A stretch of 63,273 bases of DNA, filler included, from Octopus bimaculoides (Eukaryota): assembly GCF_001194135.2 (NCBI RefSeq). It is 6 parts of 6 records of this genome, joined end to end, with 100 filler letters (N's around TTAATTAATTAA, not from the genome) between each part and the next. Parts side by side here need not be neighbours in the genome. Positions count along the whole stretch, not along the records: positions 1 to 20,999 come from NC_068998.1; 5 more parts are not named here. The stretch is one strand, 5' to 3'. Each line of letters opens with the position of its first letter. Positions within the stretch are counted from its first letter, which is position 1. Shown here one piece after another: positions 250 to 19,384 of this stretch. The notes below the pieces were generated by a model. That model made no database searches. It had not been told where the DNA came from and saw nothing but the letters and a program-made list of their open reading frames with translations. A program made the translations under genes and the position numbers.

Positions 250-1437
250 ATGCCGAGTTTGCAACCAGTGACGTCACACGAAGATAGCTCTAGAAATATG
301 GAAGAATTACAAACGGACCTTGACACACTGCTTTGTGGAAAACCTAAATGGAAACTTATGTGGCAAATGGGTACTGTCAGTGACCTCACGTTGGAAGAAA
401 TAGCTGAAAAAATAGAGAAAGCAGAAAAGGAGATCCAATTTCTGACCAGAGAAACGCCCCTCTTAGAGAAATATCTAGGAGACAAGTTTGTTTCAAGTGC
501 TAGTGGGAGTGGTGAAGACTCAAGCTCTGGGGTCGGCTCACAGATAAAATCTCAATCAATGTCACCTCTAGCGCTTGCTGCTCGCGCTCTTGTTCGCACT
601 AAACCAGGTAGTTTGACGACTAAACAGAAACTTGTAATCGCTCGACACTGTCACAAGTTATGTAAGGACGAATTGAAATCAACGAAAGACATTACACGCG
701 AATTTATCGAATCGAGCCTGGCTTTAATTGAAAACTACCAAAGAACTTTGGCCGACATTAAATCAGAAAGACAAGAAATCGAAGTGGAATTCGGCGATTT
801 GGTTAAAGCGGATGGCAAAATTCCTTTTCTGCATAAATGGCAAAAATATGTTACCGCAAAGAATATAAAATGTGAAAGTTTAAACAGTACGACAAAGCTA
901 CGTAATGCTGGTCTGAAGCTTAATATTAGAAAACAAATAATGATTAAGAAATATCGAAATGAAGTGGATCCCGTTGAATTCTACAGCAAATGGCTTGAAA
1001 AAAATACACTTAAAGAAGAAATTCAAAATATTATGAAACAAAAAACTCGGTTGAGGAAAGCATTGGTACCGATCGAGAGACACACTTACGAAAAGAAACA
1101 AGAACTTGAGAAGAACGTGAATCAAGGAGAAGAGTTTCGCAAGAAAATTCTGCGAGAGAAGCACAGTTTGTCTTACTTGTTAAACAACCAGCGGCATCAC
1201 GAAGATGCGAAAAAAGTGGAAGAGGCATTGAACAAACAGTTAAATACGCTTTCGGAAACTTATAGGGTACCGTCCGTCTTGGAGTACGTTACTTTGGTGA
1301 AAGACAATAAAGAAAGTAGAGAAACCATTGAAAAATGGAAGAAGAAGGTAGAGGTGGCAGAAATGGTGTACAAAGGGAACGTGAGAAAGTGGAAAGACAT
1401 TTCTGAGAATGTTAAAAAAGATAGGCTTGAAGTATAA
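250..1437 (+). CDS. CCDC113: Intronless CCDC113/CFAP263-like (DUF4201-type) coiled-coil ciliary/flagellar protein, 395 aa, divergent
   Basis: Uninterrupted 395-aa coiled-coil ORF. Motifs align by eye with CCDC113 as I recall it: LTRETPLLEKY ~ LKTETEMFEKY, SLTTKQKL ~ GLTADQKL, and C-terminal YRVPSVLEYV...IEKWKKKVEVAEMVYKGNVRKW ~ FRAPQVMTYV...IRMWERKVEIAEMSLKGHRKAW. A at -3 of the ATG; TATAAAT at 128-134. Confidence 0.8.
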   Translation: MPSLQPVTSHEDSSRNMEELQTDLDTLLCGKPKWKLMWQMGTVSDLTLEEIAEKIEKAEKEIQFLTRETPLLEKYLGDKFVSSASGSGEDSSSGVGSQIKSQSMSPLALAARALVRTKPGSLTTKQKLVIARHCHKLCKDELKSTKDITREFIESSLALIENYQRTLADIKSERQEIEVEFGDLVKADGKIPFLHKWQKYVTAKNIKCESLNSTTKLRNAGLKLNIRKQIMIKKYRNEVDPVEFYSKWLEKNTLKEEIQNIMKQKTRLRKALVPIERHTYEKKQELEKNVNQGEEFRKKILREKHSLSYLLNNQRHHEDAKKVEEALNKQLNTLSETYRVPSVLEYVTLVKDNKESRETIEKWKKKVEVAEMVYKGNVRKWKDISENVKKDRLEV

Positions 1438-2611: not shown

Positions 2612-3637
2612 NNNNNNNNNNNNNNNNNNNNNNNNNNNNNNNNNNNNNNNNNNNNNNNNNNNNNNNNNNNNNNNNNNNNNNNNNNNNNNNNNNNNNNNNN
2701 NNNNNNNNNNNNNNNNNNNNNNNNNNNNNNNNNNNNNNNNNNNNNNNNNNNNNNNNNNNNNNNNNNNNNNNNNNNNNNNNNNNNNNNNNNNNNNNNNNNN
2801 NNNNNNNNNNNNNNNNNNNNNNNNNNNNNNNNNNNNNNNNNNNNNNNNNNNNNNNNNNNNNNNNNNNNNNNNNNNNNNNNNNNNNNNNNNNNNNNNNNNN
2901 NNNNNNNNNNNNNNNNNNNNNNNNNNNNNNNNNNNNNNNNNNNNNNNNNNNNNNNNNNNNNNNNNNNNNNNNNNNNNNNNNNNNNNNNNNNNNNNNNNNN
3001 NNNNNNNNNNNNNNNNNNNNNNNNNNNNNNNNNNNNNNNNNNNNNNNNNNNNNNNNNNNNNNNNNNNNNNNNNNNNNNNNNNNNNNNNNNNNNNNNNNNN
3101 NNNNNNNNNNNNNNNNNNNNNNNNNNNNNNNNNNNNNNNNNNNNNNNNNNNNNNNNNNNNNNNNNNNNNNNNNNNNNNNNNNNNNNNNNNNNNNNNNNNN
3201 NNNNNNNNNNNNNNNNNNNNNNNNNNNNNNNNNNNNNNNNNNNNNNNNNNNNNNNNNNNNNNNNNNNNNNNNNNNNNNNNNNNNNNNNNNNNNNNNNNNN
3301 NNNNNNNNNNNNNNNNNNNNNNNNNNNNNNNNNNNNNNNNNNNNNNNNNNNNNNNNNNNNNNNNNNNNNNNNNNNNNNNNNNNNNNNNNNNNNNNNNNNN
3401 NNNNNNNNNNNNNNNNNNNNNNNNNNNNNNNNNNNNNNNNNNNNNNNNNNNNNNNNNNNNNNNNNNNNNNNNNNNNNNNNNNNNNNNNNNNNNNNNNNNN
3501 NNNNNNNNNNNNNNNNNNNNNNNNNNNNNNNNNNNNNTGTATATATGTGTGTATATAAGAGAAAGATGCATACACTACTTATTCACATAATGTTTATATT
3601 CATGTTACATAGACTCAATACTGACCGGATTCTGTCC

Positions 3638-4444: not shown

Positions 4445-4660
4445 CAAATCCTGAAATTTTAGGATAGGGAGCCGGTCGATTACAACGACCTCAGCGCTCA
4501 CCTGGTACTTATTTTATCGAACGTAAAGCAGAAATTCTTTCTACTCTAAGTTCAATGCCTGAAATTTGGTGGGAGGCCATTGACTTTATTTTATCGATTC
4601 CCAGATAACGAAGCTCAAGGTCGACCTTGGTAGGATTTGAACTAAGAATGTAAAATACCC
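4445..4660 (-). mobile_element. Diverged SINE family M fragments
   Basis: CTGGTACTTATTTTATCGA and GGTCGACCTTGGTAGGATTTGAACT motifs. Confidence 0.6.
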
Positions 4661-4982
4661 AAGTACATACAGTAATAATTTTAGTGATGTGTGAGAGGGT
4701 ATTTGCCAGGGAAACACTGTGGTAGACGAATCGATTTTCAATAGATTCTAAAATCCTAGAAAAATAGTAAAGTATAAAAGACAACTCAGTCTCCAAGAAA
4801 GGCACGATGGGTATACATGTTCGTTTCTCCTTCACTGTAAATTAAAATCATTTTGTCTTAAGATTTTGCAATTTTACAGAACTATCGTCTCAGGAAAGCG
4901 AATAATGGAAGCCCTTTGTGGTCACAATCTGTGAGAAATAATAACCATTTCTCTCTGAAAGAAATATTATCTTGTCTTTTGC

Positions 4983-8584: not shown

Positions 8585-8890
8585 GTATATTTTATCTTTT
8601 TATTATTTCATTCGTTTTTTTTTTTCTATCTTTTCCTAATTCATTCGTTTCTTTTGCTTCTTTTCTTAAATTTCTGTTTTATAACTTTAGTTCTCCGAGT
8701 CTATGTTCTGTCTCGTGTTTGTATTAGTCATTTAATTTCGATGTACGTCTTTTATAGGTAATAGAAATAAAAAGCGTTGGTATATTTTATTTTTCTGACT
8801 TCGCTTGGTGTTTCTTTGTTGCTAAATATTTTGAATTAATTTCTTTAAAATTTACTTTATTAAAAAAATATATTTTTTTGTTTTTATCAG
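8585..8890 (+). other. Probable intron ending 7 nt upstream of the zinc-knuckle ATG
   Basis: Very T-rich tract ending TTTTTTGTTTTTATCAG|AGCTAATATG. Candidate donors at 8314 (CAG|GTAGTT), near 8537 (CAG|GTGAAA) and 8585 (TAG|GTATAT). Acceptor well supported, donor uncertain. Confidence 0.55.
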
Positions 8891-8897
8891 AGCTAAT

Positions 8898-11800
8898 ATG
8901 GAGAATTTTGAAACCTCTGCTTGTCGTTTATGTGGTGACAAACATCAGATAGGAAAGTGTCCGAACACAACGTGTACACAACCAGCAACACCACAATCAT
9001 CACAACAACAACAACCAGATGTTATATCTGATGGAACCCCTTCACCACATTCCTCCTCTTCACCACATTCCTCATCTACTTCATCCTCGTCTTCGACATC
9101 ACCGTCGCAAACGCAGGAAGCGAAGTCGGAACGTTCTGAGAAGAAAAAAAGACTTCAAGGTCGCTGTTTTAAATGTCACCGAATGGGTCACTATGCCCGC
9201 GACTGTTATTCAGACCGGTGTTACCAGTGCCACAAGAGCGGACACTTGGCTAAACACTGTTTCATGTTTGTTAGCCGGTGTTACATATGTAACCAACTTG
9301 GTCACGTGGCTCGACAGTGTAACCAAGAAATACTGAGTGGTTGCTGTTACAACTGTGGCCAACAGGGACATGTCCAGCGCTACTGCCCCAGCTTGATCTA
9401 TCGTACTTGCTATCGTTGTGGCGAAACCGGGCATGTAGCTCGCAAATGTGTCCATTTGTCCGGCAGTACGTACAATGGAAACAATAATACCACTAAACTG
9501 GATGGTACGGTTTCAAAACCTGATACAGCGTCAGAAAATTTTTCAACTACCAGTACTACCGCAGACATCAGAAACAACAACACTGCTGTTCCCACCACCA
9601 CCACTGTAACTACTATCAATACCAATATGACCACCATTAGCGTTGACTACACTATCAACACCGCCACTTCAACCACTGACATCTCCGCCGCTCCTGATGA
9701 TGCAGTCAATACTGACACAACCAAGGATGCTACCACTACCACTGTTAGCGCTACTATTCCAAGCACTATCACTTCTACTACTGATGCCATTAGTACCACC
9801 ACCACAAGTACTACCACCACCACAAGTACTACCACCACAAGTACTACCACCACAAGTACTACCACCACAAGTACTACCACCACAAGTACTACCACCACAA
9901 GTACTACTCCCACCACTAGTGCTATAGATACTAGTGGCCTGTCTCTCGCCACAGACTATTCTGTGGTTAGAACTGACAATGTTGATGAAACCAGTGGCAT
10001 TGCAATGAGTGATATTCAGGCAATCCAAAAGCAAGACAGCGACTCGGACAGCAGCACCAGTGATTCGGAAATAATTTACCGTGTTAAACTTGAAAGTAGT
10101 CAAAGTTCGACTGGGTCGGAAATGATTTGCAGAATGGGTAGTAGTGAAGATGAAGATATGGAGGCTCGGAGGACTCTTCTATTGAGAGACTTTGAAGAAG
10201 TCGAAGGAACTACTGAACTCTGTGAGCAGACAGCTACGGCGAGATTATCCGATACCGAAGGAGACCAGTTTGACATTCATGGGAAAAATCCAGACGAGTC
10301 AAAAGAGACTAGTAATGAAGTTTGTCCTGAAGGTAATCCCAGCAGAGACGGGTCACTAGAATCTAATGCTGCTCCTAGTTCAGGAGATATTAATTCAAAT
10401 GACAACCTAACAGAATTTAAAAATTATTTTGAAACCGCAAGTGAAGTGAGCAATCCCCAGGCCGTGTCTGACCGAAGCATCCCCGAGAAGAGGTCGGTCA
10501 CAAATAGCCCTGGGAAGCAAGCAATGCATGATGTTGGTCACGATCTTGTGGTATCGGATAAAAGCTCTATGGTGTCTAATAATTTCGACTATCAAGCTAA
10601 CAATGAGATCAATCGTTTAACAACGGCATTAAGTTCAAATGACTACGAAGCAGTCAGTGGTTCGAATAACGACAGGTCTATCTCTATGACCAACACTGAG
10701 ATCAATTTTAGTTGTGTCGTTCTGGATGAGACCGTAACTTGTAATTCTAGAGAATTGTCAAGAGAGCCCAGTTCTAGCATAGATCTCACAACAGAACAGA
10801 ACGCTCAGTTGGAGAAAAGCGAAGAATTCAATGCTTCTTGTAAAGTTTCAAAGTTAACCGAAGACGTCATTGATACAAGCGGCTCTGACAGCGATCAACT
10901 GACGTCATCGGATGACACTGTTGTTTCAGCAAAAGACACCCTCACAACTACTGATGTTGAATACGATACAACTACAACCACAGCGGATTCTGCAGCAGAC
11001 CTCCCCGCTATAACGGAAATTGAGGACTCTAGAGTTATTACTACTACAGACACTGCGACTTCTACAGCTGCAACGGACACTGCGACTCCTACAGCTGCAA
11101 CGGACACTGCGACTCCTACAGCTGCAACGGACACTGCGACTCCTACAGCTGCAACGGACACTGCGACCCCTACAGCTGCAACGGACACTGCGACCCCTAC
11201 AGCTGCAACGGACNNNNNNNNNNNNNNNNNNNNNNNNNNNNNNNNNNNNNNNNNNNNNNNNNNNNNNNNNNNNNNNNNNNNNNNNNNNNNNNNNNNNNNN
11301 NNNNNNNNNNNNNNNNNNNNNNNNNNNNNNNNNNNNNNNNNNNNNNNNNNNNNNNNNNNNNNNNNNNNNNNNNNNNNNNNNNNNNNNNNNNNNNNNNNNN
11401 NNNNNNNNNNNNNNNNNNNNNNNNNNNNNNNNNNNNNNNNNNNNNNNNNNNNNNNNNNNNNNNNNNNNNNNNNNNNNNNNNNNNNNNNNNNNNNNNNNNN
11501 NNNNNNNNNNNNNNNNNNNNNNNNNNNNNNNNNNNNNNNNNNNNNNNNNNNNNNNNNNNNNNNNNNNNNNNNNNNNNNNNNNNNNNNNNNNNNNNNNNNN
11601 NNNNNNNNNNNNNNNNNNNNNNNNNNNNNNNNNNNNNNNNNNNNNNNNNNNNNNNNNNNNNNNNNNNNNNNNNNNNNNNNNNNNNNNNNNNNNNNNNNNN
11701 NNNNNNNNNNNNNNNNNNNNNNNNNNNNNNNNNNNNNNNNNNNNNNNNNNNNNNNNNNNNNNNNNNNNNNNNNNNNNNNNNNNNNNNNNNNNNNNNNNNN

Positions 11801-13114
11801 NNNNNNNNNNNNNNNNNNNNNNNNNNNNNNNNNNNNNNNNNNNNNNNNNNNNNNNNNNNNNNNNNNNNNNNNNNNNNNNNNNNNNNNNNNNNNNNNNNNN
11901 NNNNNNNNNNNNNNNNNNNNNNNNNNNNNNNNNNNNNNNNNNNNNNNNNNNNNNNNNNNNNNNNNNNNNNNNNNNNNNNNNNNNNNNNNNNNNNNNNNNN
12001 NNNNNNNNNNNNNNNNNNNNNNNNNNNNNNNNNNNNNNNNNNNNNNNNNNNNNNNNNNNNNNNNNNNNNNNNNNNNNNNNNNNNNNNNNNNNNNNNNNNN
12101 NNNNNNNNNNNNNNNNNNNNNNNNNNNNNNNNNNNNNNNNNNNNNNNNNNNNNNNNNNNNNNNNNNNNNNNNNNNNNNNNNNNNNNNNNNNNNNNNNNNN
12201 NNNNNNNTGCAACGGACACTGCGACCTCTACTGCTGCAACGGACACTGCGACCTCTACTGCTGCAACGGACACTGCGACCTCTACTGCTGCAACGGACAC
12301 TGCGACCTCTACTGCTGCAACGGACACTGCGACATATACTGCTGCAACGGACACTGCGACCTCTCCGGCAACGGACCCGGCAGCGGACACTGCGACCTCT
12401 CCTGCAACGGATCCTGCTACTACTGGCTTCTCTGCAACGAGTACGACGGTGTGTATTGGAGAGAATGGTATCAACGGAGATGACAATCGCGATGGTTCCC
12501 TTATTACAGCTGACCTAACTGCATCAGCAGAGCCCTCTGCTCCTACTGTTGATTTCGTAGCTAACGTAAAAGAAAGCTTAGAAAGGCTGGTAACTACTGC
12601 TAATCATTTTGGTAATGGTGTGAATGATATGGATTCTGAAATTGATGAAAGCTTCCATTCACCAAGAAATATTGCCGGTGTAATAGAAGCAGTGACAGCG
12701 CCTCCGGCTTTGTCTCCGATTGTATCGCCAATAGCGCCGTCGCGCGTCTCGCTGGCCTTGTCACCAATTGTTCCGGGACGTGTGTCACCGGCTGCATCAC
12801 CAGTTGTTCCGGGACGTGTCTCACCTGCTGCATCACCAATTGTGCCGGCACCTGTATCCACCAACAATAATACTCAATACTCTGCTTGCGAGTCTTCCTT
12901 ATCAAACGCCAACCTGTTTGAGGAAAGTGGGCTAGAGTCGGAACCGTCCTGTCTGAACAATGATCTGCCAGAAAAAGTGCCTCGTAGGCGTTCTCAAAGC
13001 TCCAATTCCAACCAATCATTAGAATCAGAGGAAGAAGTTTTTTGTTCGAATCAGAGTAGCGATGGCGAAGATCAGGAGTACCATTCAGCAGACAGCTTTT
13101 GCACAAAGCTGTAA
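8898..13114 (+). CDS. CNBP-like CCHC zinc-knuckle protein with a very long acidic Ser/Thr-rich low-complexity C-terminus (about 1,400 aa if the gap size is right); one coding exon spanning the N gap
   Basis: Open frame 8898-11213. After the gap the same TATxTAATD repeat resumes in the frame of ORF 12449-13114 (codon GCA at 12209) and runs to TAA 13112-13114. Five CX2CX4HX4C knuckles at 9165-9449 plus a variant CX2CX3HX4C at 8922-8960. Basic EKKKRLQGR precedes the array. Confidence 0.8.
9165..9449 (+). other. Array of five CCHC zinc knuckles
   Basis: CFKCHRMGHYARDC, CYQCHKSGHLAKHC, CYICNQLGHVARQC, CYNCGQQGHVQRYC, CYRCGETGHVARKC with 4-8 aa linkers. Confidence 0.95.
9792..9920 (+). repeat. Coding 15-bp tandem repeat (TTTTS)n
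   Basis: ACTACCACCACAAGT repeated about 8 times, in frame. Confidence 0.95.
11047..12413 (+). repeat. Coding 27-bp minisatellite (TATPTAATD / TATSTAATD)n, centre in an assembly gap
   Basis: Unit ACGGACACTGCGAC(T/C)(C/T)CTAC(A/T)GCTGCA on both sides of the 994-N gap at 11214-12207. Confidence 0.95.
12760..12856 (+). repeat. Coding 36-bp repeat (SPIVPGRVSPAA) x2.7
   Basis: SPIVPGRVSPAA-SPVVPGRVSPAA-SPIVPAPV; the nucleotide repeats are visible. Confidence 0.85.
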
Positions 13115-14024
13115 CTGTTCTGTCTCTCTCCCTCCCCAACCCCGCCTTTCACACTTTTATATTTAATTTTGATATTTTGCTGACTATTTGTAACGTTAAT
13201 TTAGCCATAAATCCATGTATTTCTCTTAATCCCCGTGAAATTAAATGTTTTCTCGATCACGGATTCCTCAATATTCCCCTTAAATAAAACCAGTCATTGG
13301 AAACTAAAGAATTCGCCCTCGGAAACTTCCATCTTGAAACCCAACTATAAGTACAGTTATTGCCACCGATCCAGAATATATTTTCGTCATAACCGCAACC
13401 AAGATTTTTTTTTTTCTTTTCGCCTTCTTCCCACTCCACAAGAAAGACGGAGAGTAATAACCAACGACGGTTATCACCCTGCCTCCACCATCAAAACAAG
13501 GACTATATTTAAACGCCACGACCACTTCCATCAAATCATGTTTGTACTAACAGAATTTTTGTGGTATTACATGATTGTTTGTATTCGGCCGTAGCCTACC
13601 CAAGATAACCAAAGAGTAAATACTTTTCCAGCCTATCACAATCGGTTCATCTAACCAATGTGCAATGTTCACACCAAACCCGGTAAATTGCATGCAAATT
13701 TCTTCATTGTTCATCAGTTAATTTGTTGTATAGAAGAAAATACATAATCTACACTGTTGCCAATGGCTTACATAAACACTAAATATCACCGCCACCATTT
13801 TGACTCTTGTTCTGTGAATTTTATTGTAGCGCGGCTGATAAACTGACATTCTTTTCACATTCATCTTACAAAGATTTATAAAATAAGTACCAGTAAAATA
13901 CTGGTGTTGACAACTAATTTCCCTCATTTTGTGGGTTTGCTTATTTTACTCTGGAATTTTTGTGTACATTGTTAAATCTTCTGTTTTGATATTCTTTTAA
14001 AACTTGATAAGTAAATTTATTGGA

Positions 14025-18220: not shown

Positions 18221-18540
18221 CATATGTCGGTAATGTTATATGTTAGCTAAGGGAGGAAGGTCACTGCCCAGGTTTCTAGGCACTCCCAGGAATGGATGGA
18301 TGCTTGTGCGTGTGTATACGTATCTAAGTACACACATACACATAATTACATGTGTGTATGTGTGTGTGTAGATACATGCGTACACATGTTCACACATATA
18401 TGCATATCAATCTCTACAACTATCTATCTATCTATTTCATATATACACACACGCATGTATAGGTAAATATGTGTGTGTATGTGTGTGCTTATATACATAC
18501 ACATGGGATGATAAGTGTAGGTGTGTATATGTATGTATAT

Positions 18541-18604
<64 letters not shown>

Positions 18605-18659
18605 ATGTATATGTATGCATATACATATGTACTGATAGATATATAAGTATGTATGTATA

Positions 18660-18705
<46 letters not shown>

Positions 18706-19384
18706 GTGTGTGCCTTCATGTAATGCTCGCACGCAGATACACATACATACATACAAACAGGTAGACAGCTAGATAAATAGACAGAAGACAGACAAACAGA
18801 TAGATAAATAAATAGTTAAGTTAGACAAAGAGACAAGAGCTGGATCACGTATTTGCTTTGCAAATATATCTCTCTCTGACATTCTTGCACATCCTGTGTC
18901 TGTTTTATTCTAAATAACGAACAGCAAGAGAGCAAACTTGGCGTCCAAATTAAATTTCCATTTAGTAAGTTCCGCCCTTTCCTCTTGCTTTCAGATCTTT
19001 CAGTAGATTTCCAGTTTCGAGGAACAATTTTACATTAGTACACTCAGGACCTCGGTAAACCTCCGCTAAAGTGGTTAGTTGCGTGGTATTATTGTCGGGT
19101 GGTGATGGGCGTTGGGGTAGCGGCGTATGGTGGTTTCATTAGACATGAAATCTACCTTTAATGTTGATATTTGATACGACAGGGATGTTTGAAACAATTA
19201 GCTTTGTGTGTAATTCTATATTACATTGTTTCCCCTCTATATTTTTTCTCTAATGCTTCGTAATCGTGAACTAATGAGCTTAGCATGAATATGCATGCAT
19301 GCATGCTCTGTGTTCTGTGTGTAATATATGCATACATATATTATGTTTTGCATACATATCAGCTGCACTTATATATGGTATAAT

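What the first reader, a model, noticed from the sequence alone, without database searches (positions are those of the whole stretch)
8898..13114. CNBP-derived zinc-knuckle array fused to a roughly 1,200-aa repeat-built acidic disordered tail
Seen: five CCHC knuckles followed by a Thr/Ser/Asp/Glu-rich tail with no recognisable folded domain, no signal peptide and no TM segment, all in one exon. The knuckles follow CNBP order: CFKC first, CCYNCG like CNBP finger 4 but ending GHVQRYC like finger 5, then CYRCGETGHVA identical to finger 6. There is no RGG box. Known: CNBP/Gis2/Byr3 proteins are small (about 170 aa) ssRNA/G4-binding translational regulators, and mammalian ZCCHC13 is a testis CNBP retrocopy. 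Inference: a lineage-specific chimeric gene, a CNBP retrocopy that gained a large IDR from simple-repeat expansion, possibly an RNA-binding condensate or germ-granule scaffold. I do not recognise this architecture.
Basis: partly seen in the sequence, partly recalled or inferred. Interest (0 to 1): 0.75.

Follow-up and report, generated by a model that had tools for sequence, protein, structure and literature searches.

The report
Octopus CNBP-like protein with long tail
An octopus gene joins a five-zinc-knuckle nucleic-acid-binding module, matching small CNBP proteins knuckle for knuckle, to a very long acidic, threonine/serine-rich tail with no detectable relatives; it looks like a real gene of modest interest, but its origin and function remain untested.

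Summary
Window 8898-13114 (+) lies in Octopus bimaculoides chromosome CM046618.1. It carries a 772-codon open frame, then an assembly gap, then a 301-codon open frame ending at 13114.

The gap sits inside a 27-nt (9-aa, TDTATxTAA) tandem array that abuts both edges. The coding phase relative to the repeat unit is the same on both sides. One continuous ORF is therefore the economical reading, but it is unproven, because the 994-N length is arbitrary and breaks the frame.

The head has five canonical CCHC knuckles plus an atypical sixth near the N-terminus. The five align one-to-one, with identical linker lengths, to a 145-aa five-knuckle protein (P0002) that resembles small CNBPs. That protein's Gly/Arg-rich spacer between knuckles 1 and 2 is missing here.

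The tail (883 sequenced aa plus about 331 hidden) is acidic and Thr/Ser-rich. It has no Pfam or PDB match and no database homologue. Only part of it is visibly repeat-built.

'CNBP-derived' is supported. 'Retrocopy' is not: there is no poly(A) or target-site trace, and a close relative of the best-matching small knuckle protein is itself intronless. The condensate role is speculation. This is a new variant of a known kind, of modest interest.

The parts
8898..11213 (+). Coding sequence, part before the gap: 772 codons from the ATG (context aatATGg) with no stop.
   Evidence: An in-frame stop lies about 24 codons upstream. The public gene model starts at this ATG.
8875..8890 (+). Possible 3' splice site (tttttgtttttatcAG) 7 nt upstream of the ATG. 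If real, it implies a 5'-UTR intron. Inferred from sequence only.
   Evidence: read directly; no transcript data.
8922..8960 (+). Atypical N-terminal knuckle-like motif CRLCGDKHQIGKC (CX2CX3HX4C, aa 9-21). Not recognised by Pfam.
8961..9164 (+). Gln/Ser/Pro-rich spacer (aa 22-89). It includes an 18-nt tandem repeat (9040-9077) and a basic cluster KKKR (aa 82-85) just before knuckle 1.
9165..9449 (+). Five canonical CCHC zinc knuckles (9165-9206, 9219-9260, 9279-9320, 9345-9386, 9408-9449) with linkers of 4, 6, 8 and 7 aa. They are colinear with small five-knuckle CNBP-like proteins.
9450..9917 (+). Thr-rich low-complexity segment, including a 15-nt (TTTTS) tandem repeat of 7.5 copies at 9792-9907.
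9918..11030 (+). Largely non-repetitive acidic Ser/Asp/Glu/Asn-rich segment (371 aa) with no detectable homologue.
11049..11213 (+). Left end of the 27-nt (9-aa, TATPTAATD) tandem array: 6.1 copies, 98% matches.
11214..12207 (.). Assembly gap (994 N, length estimated), flanked on both sides by the same 27-nt array. It presumably hides further copies (about 37 if the estimate is right).
12208..12417 (+). Right end of the 27-nt array (TDTATSTAA variant, 5.8 copies) grading into degenerate copies.
12209..13114 (+). Coding sequence, part after the gap: 301 codons plus stop (TAA at 13112-13114), in the repeat's coding phase. It includes a 36-nt (SPIVPGRVSPAA) repeat at 12761-12855 and an acidic C-terminus.
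13240..13288 (+). Candidate polyadenylation signals ATTAAA (13240) and AATAAA (13283), 126 and 169 nt after the stop. Inferred.

Best explanation
This is a real protein-coding gene of Octopus bimaculoides.

Its N-terminal part (aa 90-184) is a complete CNBP-type module of five tandem CCHC zinc knuckles. The module matches a small five-knuckle protein resembling CNBPs knuckle for knuckle. The Gly/Arg-rich spacer that such proteins carry between knuckles 1 and 2 is missing.

Two additions surround this basic module (net charge +11 over aa 1-190):
- an 89-aa N-terminal leader, made of one degenerate knuckle and a Ser-rich spacer;
- a C-terminal extension of at least 883 aa, probably about 1,200 aa. 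It is acidic, rich in Thr, Ser and Ala, lacks any recognisable domain and is partly built from in-frame tandem repeats of 15, 27 and 36 nt.

How it most likely works (inferred): the knuckles bind single-stranded, G-rich RNA or DNA as CNBP knuckles do. The long polyanionic, probably phosphorylated and disordered tail may compete with nucleic acid for the basic head (autoinhibition or tuning of specificity). It may also act as a solubilising or multivalent spacer in RNP assemblies.

How the gene arose is not resolved: DNA duplication, retroposition, or extension of the ancestral CNBP.
For: - Reading frame: 772 and 301 codons are open. The non-repetitive 371-codon stretch has 0 stops against 23 expected (0 of 2000 shuffles), while the other frames are full of stops. 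Purines make up 73% of first codon positions in that stretch.
- Continuity: the same repeat, in the same coding phase, lies on both sides of the gap.
- Knuckles: Pfam zf-CCHC E=2.9e-16.
- Relatives: all named top hits are CNBPs. BLASTP against P0002 gives 93 bits, E=2e-30, in one alignment K1-K5 to k1-k5, with identical linker lengths 6/8/7 and P0002's 36-aa spacer as the only large gap. P0005, a protein with the same knuckle layout, has a cluster-mate named 'cellular nucleic acid-binding protein'.
- Other knuckle families score far lower: Air2 28.5 bits, HIV NC at most 35.5 bits.
- Tail: no Pfam, PDB or database homologue. Net charge is -63 and -28, with 35 S/T-x-x-D/E sites before the gap. 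No TM segment or signal peptide.
- Annotation: a public gene model starts at this ATG.
- Published basis for the function: CNBP's CCHC knuckles and RGG box bind and unfold G-rich structures (PMC6735679), and CNBP homologues regulate translation (PMC8439652, PMC6083090).
Against: - No transcript, protein or orthologue evidence could be obtained.
- Continuity through the gap is unproven.
- The window's own product never appeared in the protein searches, although a gene is on record here. Those libraries therefore have a blind spot. Close orthologues clustered with it could be hidden too, so 'no homologue' excludes only distant relatives.
- AlphaFold in single-sequence mode gave pLDDT 36.7 and 44.1 and even mis-modelled the knuckles as helices. 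It says nothing reliable about disorder.
- The RGG box, which contributes to G4 recognition in CNBP, is absent, so target preference may differ.
- All functional statements are inference.
Confidence: 0.55

Rival explanations
1. One reading: a processed retrocopy of the octopus CNBP mRNA landed here, lost its stop codon, and gained the tail by reading into and expanding simple repeats.
For: - The coding sequence sits in one uninterrupted exon.
- The tail starts directly after the last knuckle, where small CNBPs end.
- Several in-frame tandem arrays are visible.
- The neighbouring gene 7.5 kb upstream is also an intronless, diverged copy of a normally conserved gene, CFAP263/CCDC113-like. That would fit a retrogene-rich neighbourhood.
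Against: - There is no A-run of 8 or more downstream of the stop or just after the knuckles.
- No credible target-site duplication was found.
- P0034, a near-identical relative of the best-matching small knuckle protein, is intronless in its own animal genome, so lacking introns is not diagnostic.
- A good 3' splice site just upstream of the ATG suggests a 5'-UTR intron.
- Identity of 37-43% to CNBPs means that any copying was ancient or was followed by fast divergence.
- The 371-aa acidic stretch is largely non-repetitive.
- No parental gene could be located.
Confidence: 0.25
2. It is the octopus CNBP orthologue itself rather than an extra copy. The ancestral gene lost its RGG spacer and was extended at both ends.
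For: - All five knuckles are colinear with a small five-knuckle CNBP-like protein.
- By my own recollection, identity of 37-43% is not far below what CNBPs of different phyla share.
Against: - CNBP is a compact, conserved, highly expressed protein (PMC6735679, PMC8439652). A seven-fold extension with loss of the RGG box would be unusual.
- His replaces Gly/Asn at position 5 of knuckles 1 and 2, which points to relaxed or changed constraint.
- This could not be tested because the octopus proteome could not be searched.
Confidence: 0.1
3. It is a decaying or mis-assembled locus rather than one gene. The gap could hide a stop or frameshift, or the two halves could belong to different transcripts, so the 1,400-aa protein would not exist.
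For: - The gap length as written breaks the frame and the repeat phase.
- The public model gives only 985 aa, so the annotators spliced around the gap. No GT-AG model of my own, and neither of two candidates looked up by exact sequence, reproduces it.
- No expression data are available.
Against: - Both halves are long open frames far beyond chance.
- The knuckle-to-tail junction and 582 aa of tail lie in continuous sequence before the gap.
- The repeat unit and its coding phase are identical on both sides, and only that phase stays open to 13114.
Confidence: 0.1
4. The knuckles derive from a retroelement Gag/nucleocapsid, as proposed for the expanded CCHC gene families of cephalopods, or the gene is an Air1/ZCCHC7-type TRAMP subunit.
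For: - CCHC families are expanded in cephalopods and have been attributed to retroelements (PMC13218726).
- Air1/2 also carry five knuckles (PMC3384339).
- Linker 4 reads LIYRT, which faintly recalls the IWRxY motif.
Against: - There is no capsid, protease, RT or integrase domain in the ORF or in ten of the longer flanking ORFs.
- Nucleocapsid matches cover only two knuckles, at 35.5 bits or less. Air2 scores 28.5 bits, against 93-103 bits for CNBP-type proteins.
- A ZCCHC7 fragment recalled from memory scored 31 bits (a lead only).
- The Trp and the final Tyr of IWRxY are absent.
Confidence: 0.04

Closest known systems
CNBP / ZNF9 family (vertebrate CNBP, insect CNBP, yeast Gis2, S. pombe Byr3), especially the five-knuckle small proteins represented by P0002/P0034 and P0005/P0029
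   Same: - Tandem CX2CX4HX4C knuckles with an aromatic residue after the first Cys and a G-H pair.
- One-to-one colinearity of the five knuckles, with identical linker lengths (6, 8, 7 aa).
- 37-43% identity.
- The motifs CCYNCG and CYRCGETGHVA are shared with vertebrate CNBP.
   Different: - No Gly/Arg (RGG) spacer between knuckles 1 and 2; the linker is 4 aa instead of 32-40.
- His at knuckle position 5 in K1 and K2.
- An 89-aa N-terminal leader with a degenerate knuckle.
- A C-terminal acidic Thr/Ser-rich extension of 883 aa or more. CNBPs are 130-200 aa in total.
ZCCHC13
   Same: It would be a precedent for a lineage-specific extra CNBP-like gene encoded in a single exon. My literature search listed no paper that had this as its subject, and I opened none of the papers it did list.
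   Different: ZCCHC13 stays small and consists only of knuckles. It has no long tail.
Air1/Air2/ZCCHC7 (TRAMP zinc-knuckle subunits)
   Same: Five CCHC knuckles flanked by disordered regions (PMC3384339).
   Different: Much weaker sequence match (28.5 bits), no IWRxY motif in linker 4, and different linker lengths.
Nucleic-acid-binding proteins with acidic autoinhibitory or chaperone-like tails (e.g. HMGB1 acidic tail, Nopp140/nucleolin acidic Ser-rich tracts); own knowledge, analogy only
   Same: A basic nucleic-acid-binding module joined to a long polyanionic, Ser/Thr-rich, probably phosphorylated region.
   Different: No sequence relationship. This tail is far longer and dominated by Thr and Ala repeats. 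No experiment bears on it.

Membership tests
CNBP / ZNF9 family | Tandem array of 5-7 CX2CX4HX4C zinc knuckles separated by short linkers | tested here: met
   Five canonical knuckles at aa 90-184 with linkers of 4, 6, 8 and 7 aa. Pfam zf-CCHC E=2.9e-16.
CNBP / ZNF9 family | Closest sequence relatives are CNBPs, with a colinear alignment over the whole array | tested here: met
   Named top hits are CNBPs. BLASTP against P0002 gives 93 bits, E=2e-30, aligning K1-K5 to k1-k5. This is the forward direction only; a reciprocal search against the octopus proteome was not possible.
CNBP / ZNF9 family | Gly/Arg-rich (RGG) box in the linker between knuckles 1 and 2 (PMC6735679) | tested here: not met
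   No RGG anywhere. The K1-K2 linker is YSDR, and the spacer present in P0002 is a 36-aa gap in the alignment.
CNBP / ZNF9 family | Small protein (about 130-200 aa) made almost entirely of the knuckles | tested here: not met
   At least 1,073 sequenced residues. All database relatives are 206 aa or shorter.
CNBP / ZNF9 family | Binds single-stranded G-rich DNA/RNA and unfolds G-quadruplexes | not testable with these tools
   Needs EMSA or CLIP.
Processed retrocopy (retrogene) | Lacks the introns of a multi-exon parental gene | tested here: inconclusive
   The coding sequence is uninterrupted. The parental octopus CNBP was not available. P0034, a near-identical relative of the best-matching small knuckle protein, is natively intronless.
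Processed retrocopy (retrogene) | Remnant poly(A) tract at the 3' end of the copied mRNA | tested here: not met
   No A-run of 8 or more between 8400 and 14500. It could have decayed with age.
Processed retrocopy (retrogene) | Flanking target-site duplications | tested here: not met
   Only AT-rich low-complexity direct matches at 71-81% identity flank the gene.
Retroelement Gag nucleocapsid-derived CCHC gene | One to three knuckles next to capsid-like or pol domains, or best matches to Gag | tested here: not met
   No Gag or pol domain. Nucleocapsid matches score 35.5 bits or less and cover two knuckles only.
Air1/Air2/ZCCHC7 (TRAMP) | IWRxY motif in the linker between knuckles 4 and 5 (PMC3384339) | tested here: not met
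   Linker 4 is PSLIYRT, with no Trp and no terminal Tyr. Air2 scores 28.5 bits.

The most novel reading that the evidence does not exclude
An octopod-specific RNA-binding protein in which a complete CNBP module, stripped of its RGG box, is fused to a polyanionic Thr/Ser/Ala-repeat region of about 1,200 aa, including a 9-aa TxTxTxTAA array of perhaps 50 copies. It would act as a scaffold or regulator of RNP granules, germline or neuronal. It would also show how a housekeeping translational regulator was turned into a lineage-specific condensate protein through repeat expansion.
Probability: 0.1. Interest if true: 0.6.

Novelty: new variant of a known kind. Interest (0 to 1): 0.33.

Why it matters
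If the gene is expressed and conserved among octopods, it would be a clean natural example of a compact, ancient nucleic-acid-binding module gaining a giant low-complexity extension in a single lineage. CNBP is implicated in G-quadruplex unfolding and translational control.

It would bear on two questions. The first is how lineage-specific genes of cephalopods arise. The second is how acidic disordered tails tune zinc-knuckle RNA binding.

As it stands, this is an uncharacterised, already-annotated gene with one recognisable domain type and an orphan tail. That is useful for annotation, but it does not settle a long-standing question.

Tried and rejected
1. Homologues of the tail. The word-indexed search of 5.8 billion proteins and the full HMMER scan of 1.84 billion cluster representatives found nothing for aa 341-711. 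PDB found nothing either. The window's own product was not returned, so close orthologues may be hidden.
2. Rebuilding the public 985-aa model. No two-exon GT-AG model fits. Among in-frame joins that end at the same stop, one GC-AG candidate (11204/12464) and one other were tried, and neither exact sequence is in the collection. I abandoned this.
The exact sequence is not in the collection, so I did not use it. I used database CNBPs P0003, P0006, P0011 and P0012 instead.
4. AlphaFold2 without an alignment, on both halves. Mean pLDDT was 36.7 and 44.1, and the knuckles were mis-modelled as helices. It is uninformative for or against disorder, so I ran no fold search. The TDTATSTAA copies came out as regular 6-residue strands at pLDDT about 56-64. 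I do not trust this.
5. Retrocopy hallmarks (A-tracts, target-site duplications). None were found.
6. Retroelement, TRAMP and Vasa-type alternatives. No supporting domains were found, and bit scores were much lower.
7. Source organism of the closest small knuckle proteins. The sample accessions appear in no searchable paper. One contig carries animal-type CEP131 exons.
8. Rfam and tRNA scans of the window. Nothing was found.
9. Literature on ZCCHC13 as a CNBP retrogene. The search listed no paper with this as its subject, and I opened none of the listed papers.


Full report
**Source and gene record.** The upstream ORF 250-1437 is found by exact match on NCBI assembly GCA_001194135.2, record CM046618.1, positions 47,207,225-47,228,412. 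Its RefSeq twin GCF_001194135.2 is listed as Octopus bimaculoides in PMC13218726. The same record lists a called gene that starts exactly at window 8898 on the + strand with a 985-aa product. The locus is thus already annotated in public data, although I could not retrieve a name for it.

**The gap, tested first.** The window has N runs at 2612-3537 and 11214-12207.
- Before the gap, the frame opened by the ATG at 8898 runs 772 codons without a stop.
- The last 165 nt before the gap are 6.1 copies of a 27-nt unit at 98% identity. The first 157 nt after the gap are 5.8 copies of the same unit at 96%, followed by degenerate copies to about 12417.
- Before the gap the coding frame reads the unit as TATPTAATD. 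After the gap, the only frame that stays open (12209 to the TAA at 13112-13114, 301 codons) reads it as TDTATSTAA, which is the same phase relative to the unit.
- The other two forward frames after the gap end at 12483 and 12518.
- As written, the 994 Ns put the halves out of frame. The copy spacing across the gap is 1058 = 39x27+5, so the repeat phase is broken as well. This shows only that the gap length is a placeholder.
- My reading: the assembler collapsed a long coding minisatellite, and one ORF running through it is the economical interpretation. A stop or frameshift inside the gap cannot be excluded. If the size estimate is right, about 37 more copies are hidden and the protein is about 1,400 aa. 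What is actually sequenced is 772 + 301 = 1,073 aa.

**Is the ORF more than chance?**
- The largely non-repetitive stretch 9918-11030 (371 codons) has 0 in-frame stops. Shuffles give a mean of 23.1 and a minimum of 11 in 2000 trials. The other five frames have 12-53 stops.
- The C-terminal 221 codons have 0 stops against 11.2 expected.
- Purines make up 73% of first codon positions in the 371-codon stretch, as in ordinary coding sequence.
- The long antisense and off-frame ORFs listed lie over the repeats and are by-products of low complexity.

**The head.**
- A regular-expression scan finds five canonical CX2CX4HX4C knuckles at aa 90-103, 108-121, 128-141, 150-163 and 171-184.
- Pfam gives zf-CCHC at E=2.9e-16 and nothing else.
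- Against the large protein collection, every named top hit is a CNBP (musk deer, echidna, salmonids). All hits are 206 aa or shorter, at 35-43% identity.
But BLASTP finds two registers of nearly equal score, 76.6 and 75.9 bits. The finger-order argument is therefore weak on that comparison.
- The decisive comparison is with P0002, a 145-aa five-knuckle protein. BLASTP gives a single alignment of 93 bits (E=2e-30) that pairs K1-K5 with k1-k5. Linker lengths after knuckle 2 are identical (6, 8 and 7 aa). The only large gap is P0002's 36-aa Gly/Arg-containing spacer between knuckles 1 and 2, where the octopus protein has just YSDR.
- P0005 has the same knuckle layout, and one of its 90%-cluster members is named 'cellular nucleic acid-binding protein'.
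- The octopus array therefore corresponds to a whole five-knuckle CNBP-type protein minus its RGG-type spacer, and no RGG occurs anywhere.
- Other knuckle families score far lower: Air2 28.5 bits and HIV nucleocapsid at most 35.5 bits over two knuckles.
- The IWRxY motif that defines linker 4 of Air1/2 (PMC3384339) is absent. Linker 4 is PSLIYRT.

**The tail.** After the last knuckle come four parts:
- a Thr-rich segment with a 15-nt (TTTTS) array of 7.5 copies at 9792-9907;
- a 371-aa acidic Ser/Asp/Glu/Asn-rich segment with only short, weak repeats;
- the 27-nt array with the gap;
- a 230-aa C-terminal part with a 36-nt (SPIVPGRVSPAA) repeat of 2.6 copies and an acidic end.

Its properties are as follows.
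- The pre-gap tail is T 23%, S 14%, D 10%, A 9%, E 6%. Net charge is -63 before the gap and -28 after it, against +11 for aa 1-190.
- There are 35 S/T-x-x-D/E sites before the gap, and basic clusters KKKR (aa 82-85) and RRR near the C-terminus.
- There is no hydrophobic segment (highest 19-residue Kyte-Doolittle mean 1.37) and no signal-peptide-like N-terminus. A secreted mucin reading is therefore unlikely.
- There is no Pfam family, no PDB sequence match and no homologue in either large search.
- Caveat: the window's own product never appeared in any of these searches, although it is on record. Because the libraries hold one representative per 90% or 50% cluster, close octopod orthologues could be hidden with it. 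The null result excludes distant relatives, not congeneric ones.
- AlphaFold2 without an alignment gave mean pLDDT 36.7 and 44.1 and mis-modelled the knuckles as helices. I draw nothing from it about disorder.
- 'Repeat-built' is partly right. Tandem arrays make up about 22% of the sequenced tail, and about 43% if the gap is all array.

**Origin.** The retrocopy idea has no specific support.
- No A-tract lies downstream of the stop or after the knuckles.
- The only flanking direct matches are AT-rich low-complexity sequence.
- P0034, which is at least 90% identical to P0002, is an intronless gene on an 11.6-kb animal contig next to CEP131 exons. A single coding exon can therefore be the native state of this kind of small CNBP-like gene.
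- A strong polypyrimidine-AG site 7 nt upstream of the ATG suggests a 5'-UTR intron. An in-frame stop about 24 codons upstream and the annotated start agree with 8898 as the start codon.
- Candidate poly(A) signals lie 126 and 169 nt after the stop.
- The canonical octopus CNBP could not be located with the tools available. Three origins remain open: retroposition, DNA duplication, or extension of the orthologue itself.
- Cephalopod genomes carry expanded CCHC families attributed to retroelements (PMC13218726). Nothing in this locus or in ten of its longer flanking ORFs has a Gag or pol domain.

**Mechanism (inferred).** CNBP's knuckles, which resemble retroviral nucleocapsid knuckles, and its RGG box bind and unfold G-rich structures (PMC6735679). 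CNBP homologues control translation (PMC8439652, PMC6083090).
- The octopus head keeps the Zn ligands, the aromatic residue after the first Cys and the G-H pair in all five knuckles. Binding of single-stranded nucleic acid is the most likely activity.
- Without the RGG box, and with a polyanionic Ser/Thr-rich tail several times the size of the head, I expect the tail to modulate binding. It could compete electrostatically with nucleic acid, possibly under phosphorylation control, or it could act as a spacer or scaffold.
- I put about 0.55 on 'real gene, CNBP-type nucleic-acid-binding head, orphan low-complexity tail'. I put much less on any particular role for the tail.

**Verdict.**
- Observation: partly confirmed. 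Everything holds except continuity and length across the gap, which cannot be checked.
- Interpretation: partly supported. CNBP-derived is supported, retrocopy is not shown, repeat origin holds only in part, and the condensate role is speculation.
- Novelty: a new variant of a known kind. It fails two CNBP membership features, the RGG box and small size, so I call it CNBP-like rather than a CNBP.
- Interest: modest, 0.33.

Noticed in passing
window 250-1437 (+): A 395-aa uninterrupted ORF, annotated as a gene in the assembly. It matches the axonemal protein CCDC113/CFAP263 over nearly its full length, but only weakly (8j07_i2 E=1.8e-11, 47 bits; 9fqr_Om E=1.3e-9). An intronless, diverged copy of a ciliary gene lying 7.5 kb upstream on the same strand could be a retrogene or a fast-evolving paralogue.
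   Followed up: partly
window 4509-4835 (-): A 108-aa ORF with a sub-threshold Pfam hit to the CARMIL pleckstrin-homology domain (Carm_PH, E=1.2e-4, 22.8 bits against a cut-off of 26.4). The PDB sequence search did not confirm it. It might be an exon of a minus-strand CARMIL-like gene. A minus-strand gene is called just left of the window, which would make the CFAP263-like gene nested in an intron.
   Followed up: partly
window 2612-3537: A second assembly gap (926 N), flanked by (TG)n/(CA)n-rich sequence.
   Followed up: no
window ~1800-2400, ~14230, 18420-18760, ~19700, ~19870, ~20700: Many (TG)n/(CA)n/(TA)n microsatellites. They show up as Cys-Val, His-Thr and Tyr-Ile runs in the mechanical ORF list.
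   Followed up: no
window 12209-12364 (post-gap TDTATSTAA copies): Single-sequence AlphaFold2 modelled each 9-aa copy as a 6-residue strand plus a 3-residue turn, at pLDDT about 56-64. The Pro-containing copies before the gap stayed below 45. Thr alternates at every second position of the repeat. This may be a modelling artefact of repeats.
   Followed up: no
L005 320-757 / L006 221-658 (metagenome contigs ERZ4231652/3): The best-matching small five-knuckle CNBP-like protein (P0034, at least 90% identical to P0002) is an intronless gene next to short-intron CEP131 exons on an 11.6-kb contig. It evidently comes from an unidentified small animal present in a metagenome.
   Followed up: partly
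protein search tools: The gene's own 985-aa product is on record in the gene index, yet it was never returned by any of the four protein searches that should have hit it. Null results for close relatives should therefore be read with care.
   Followed up: partly
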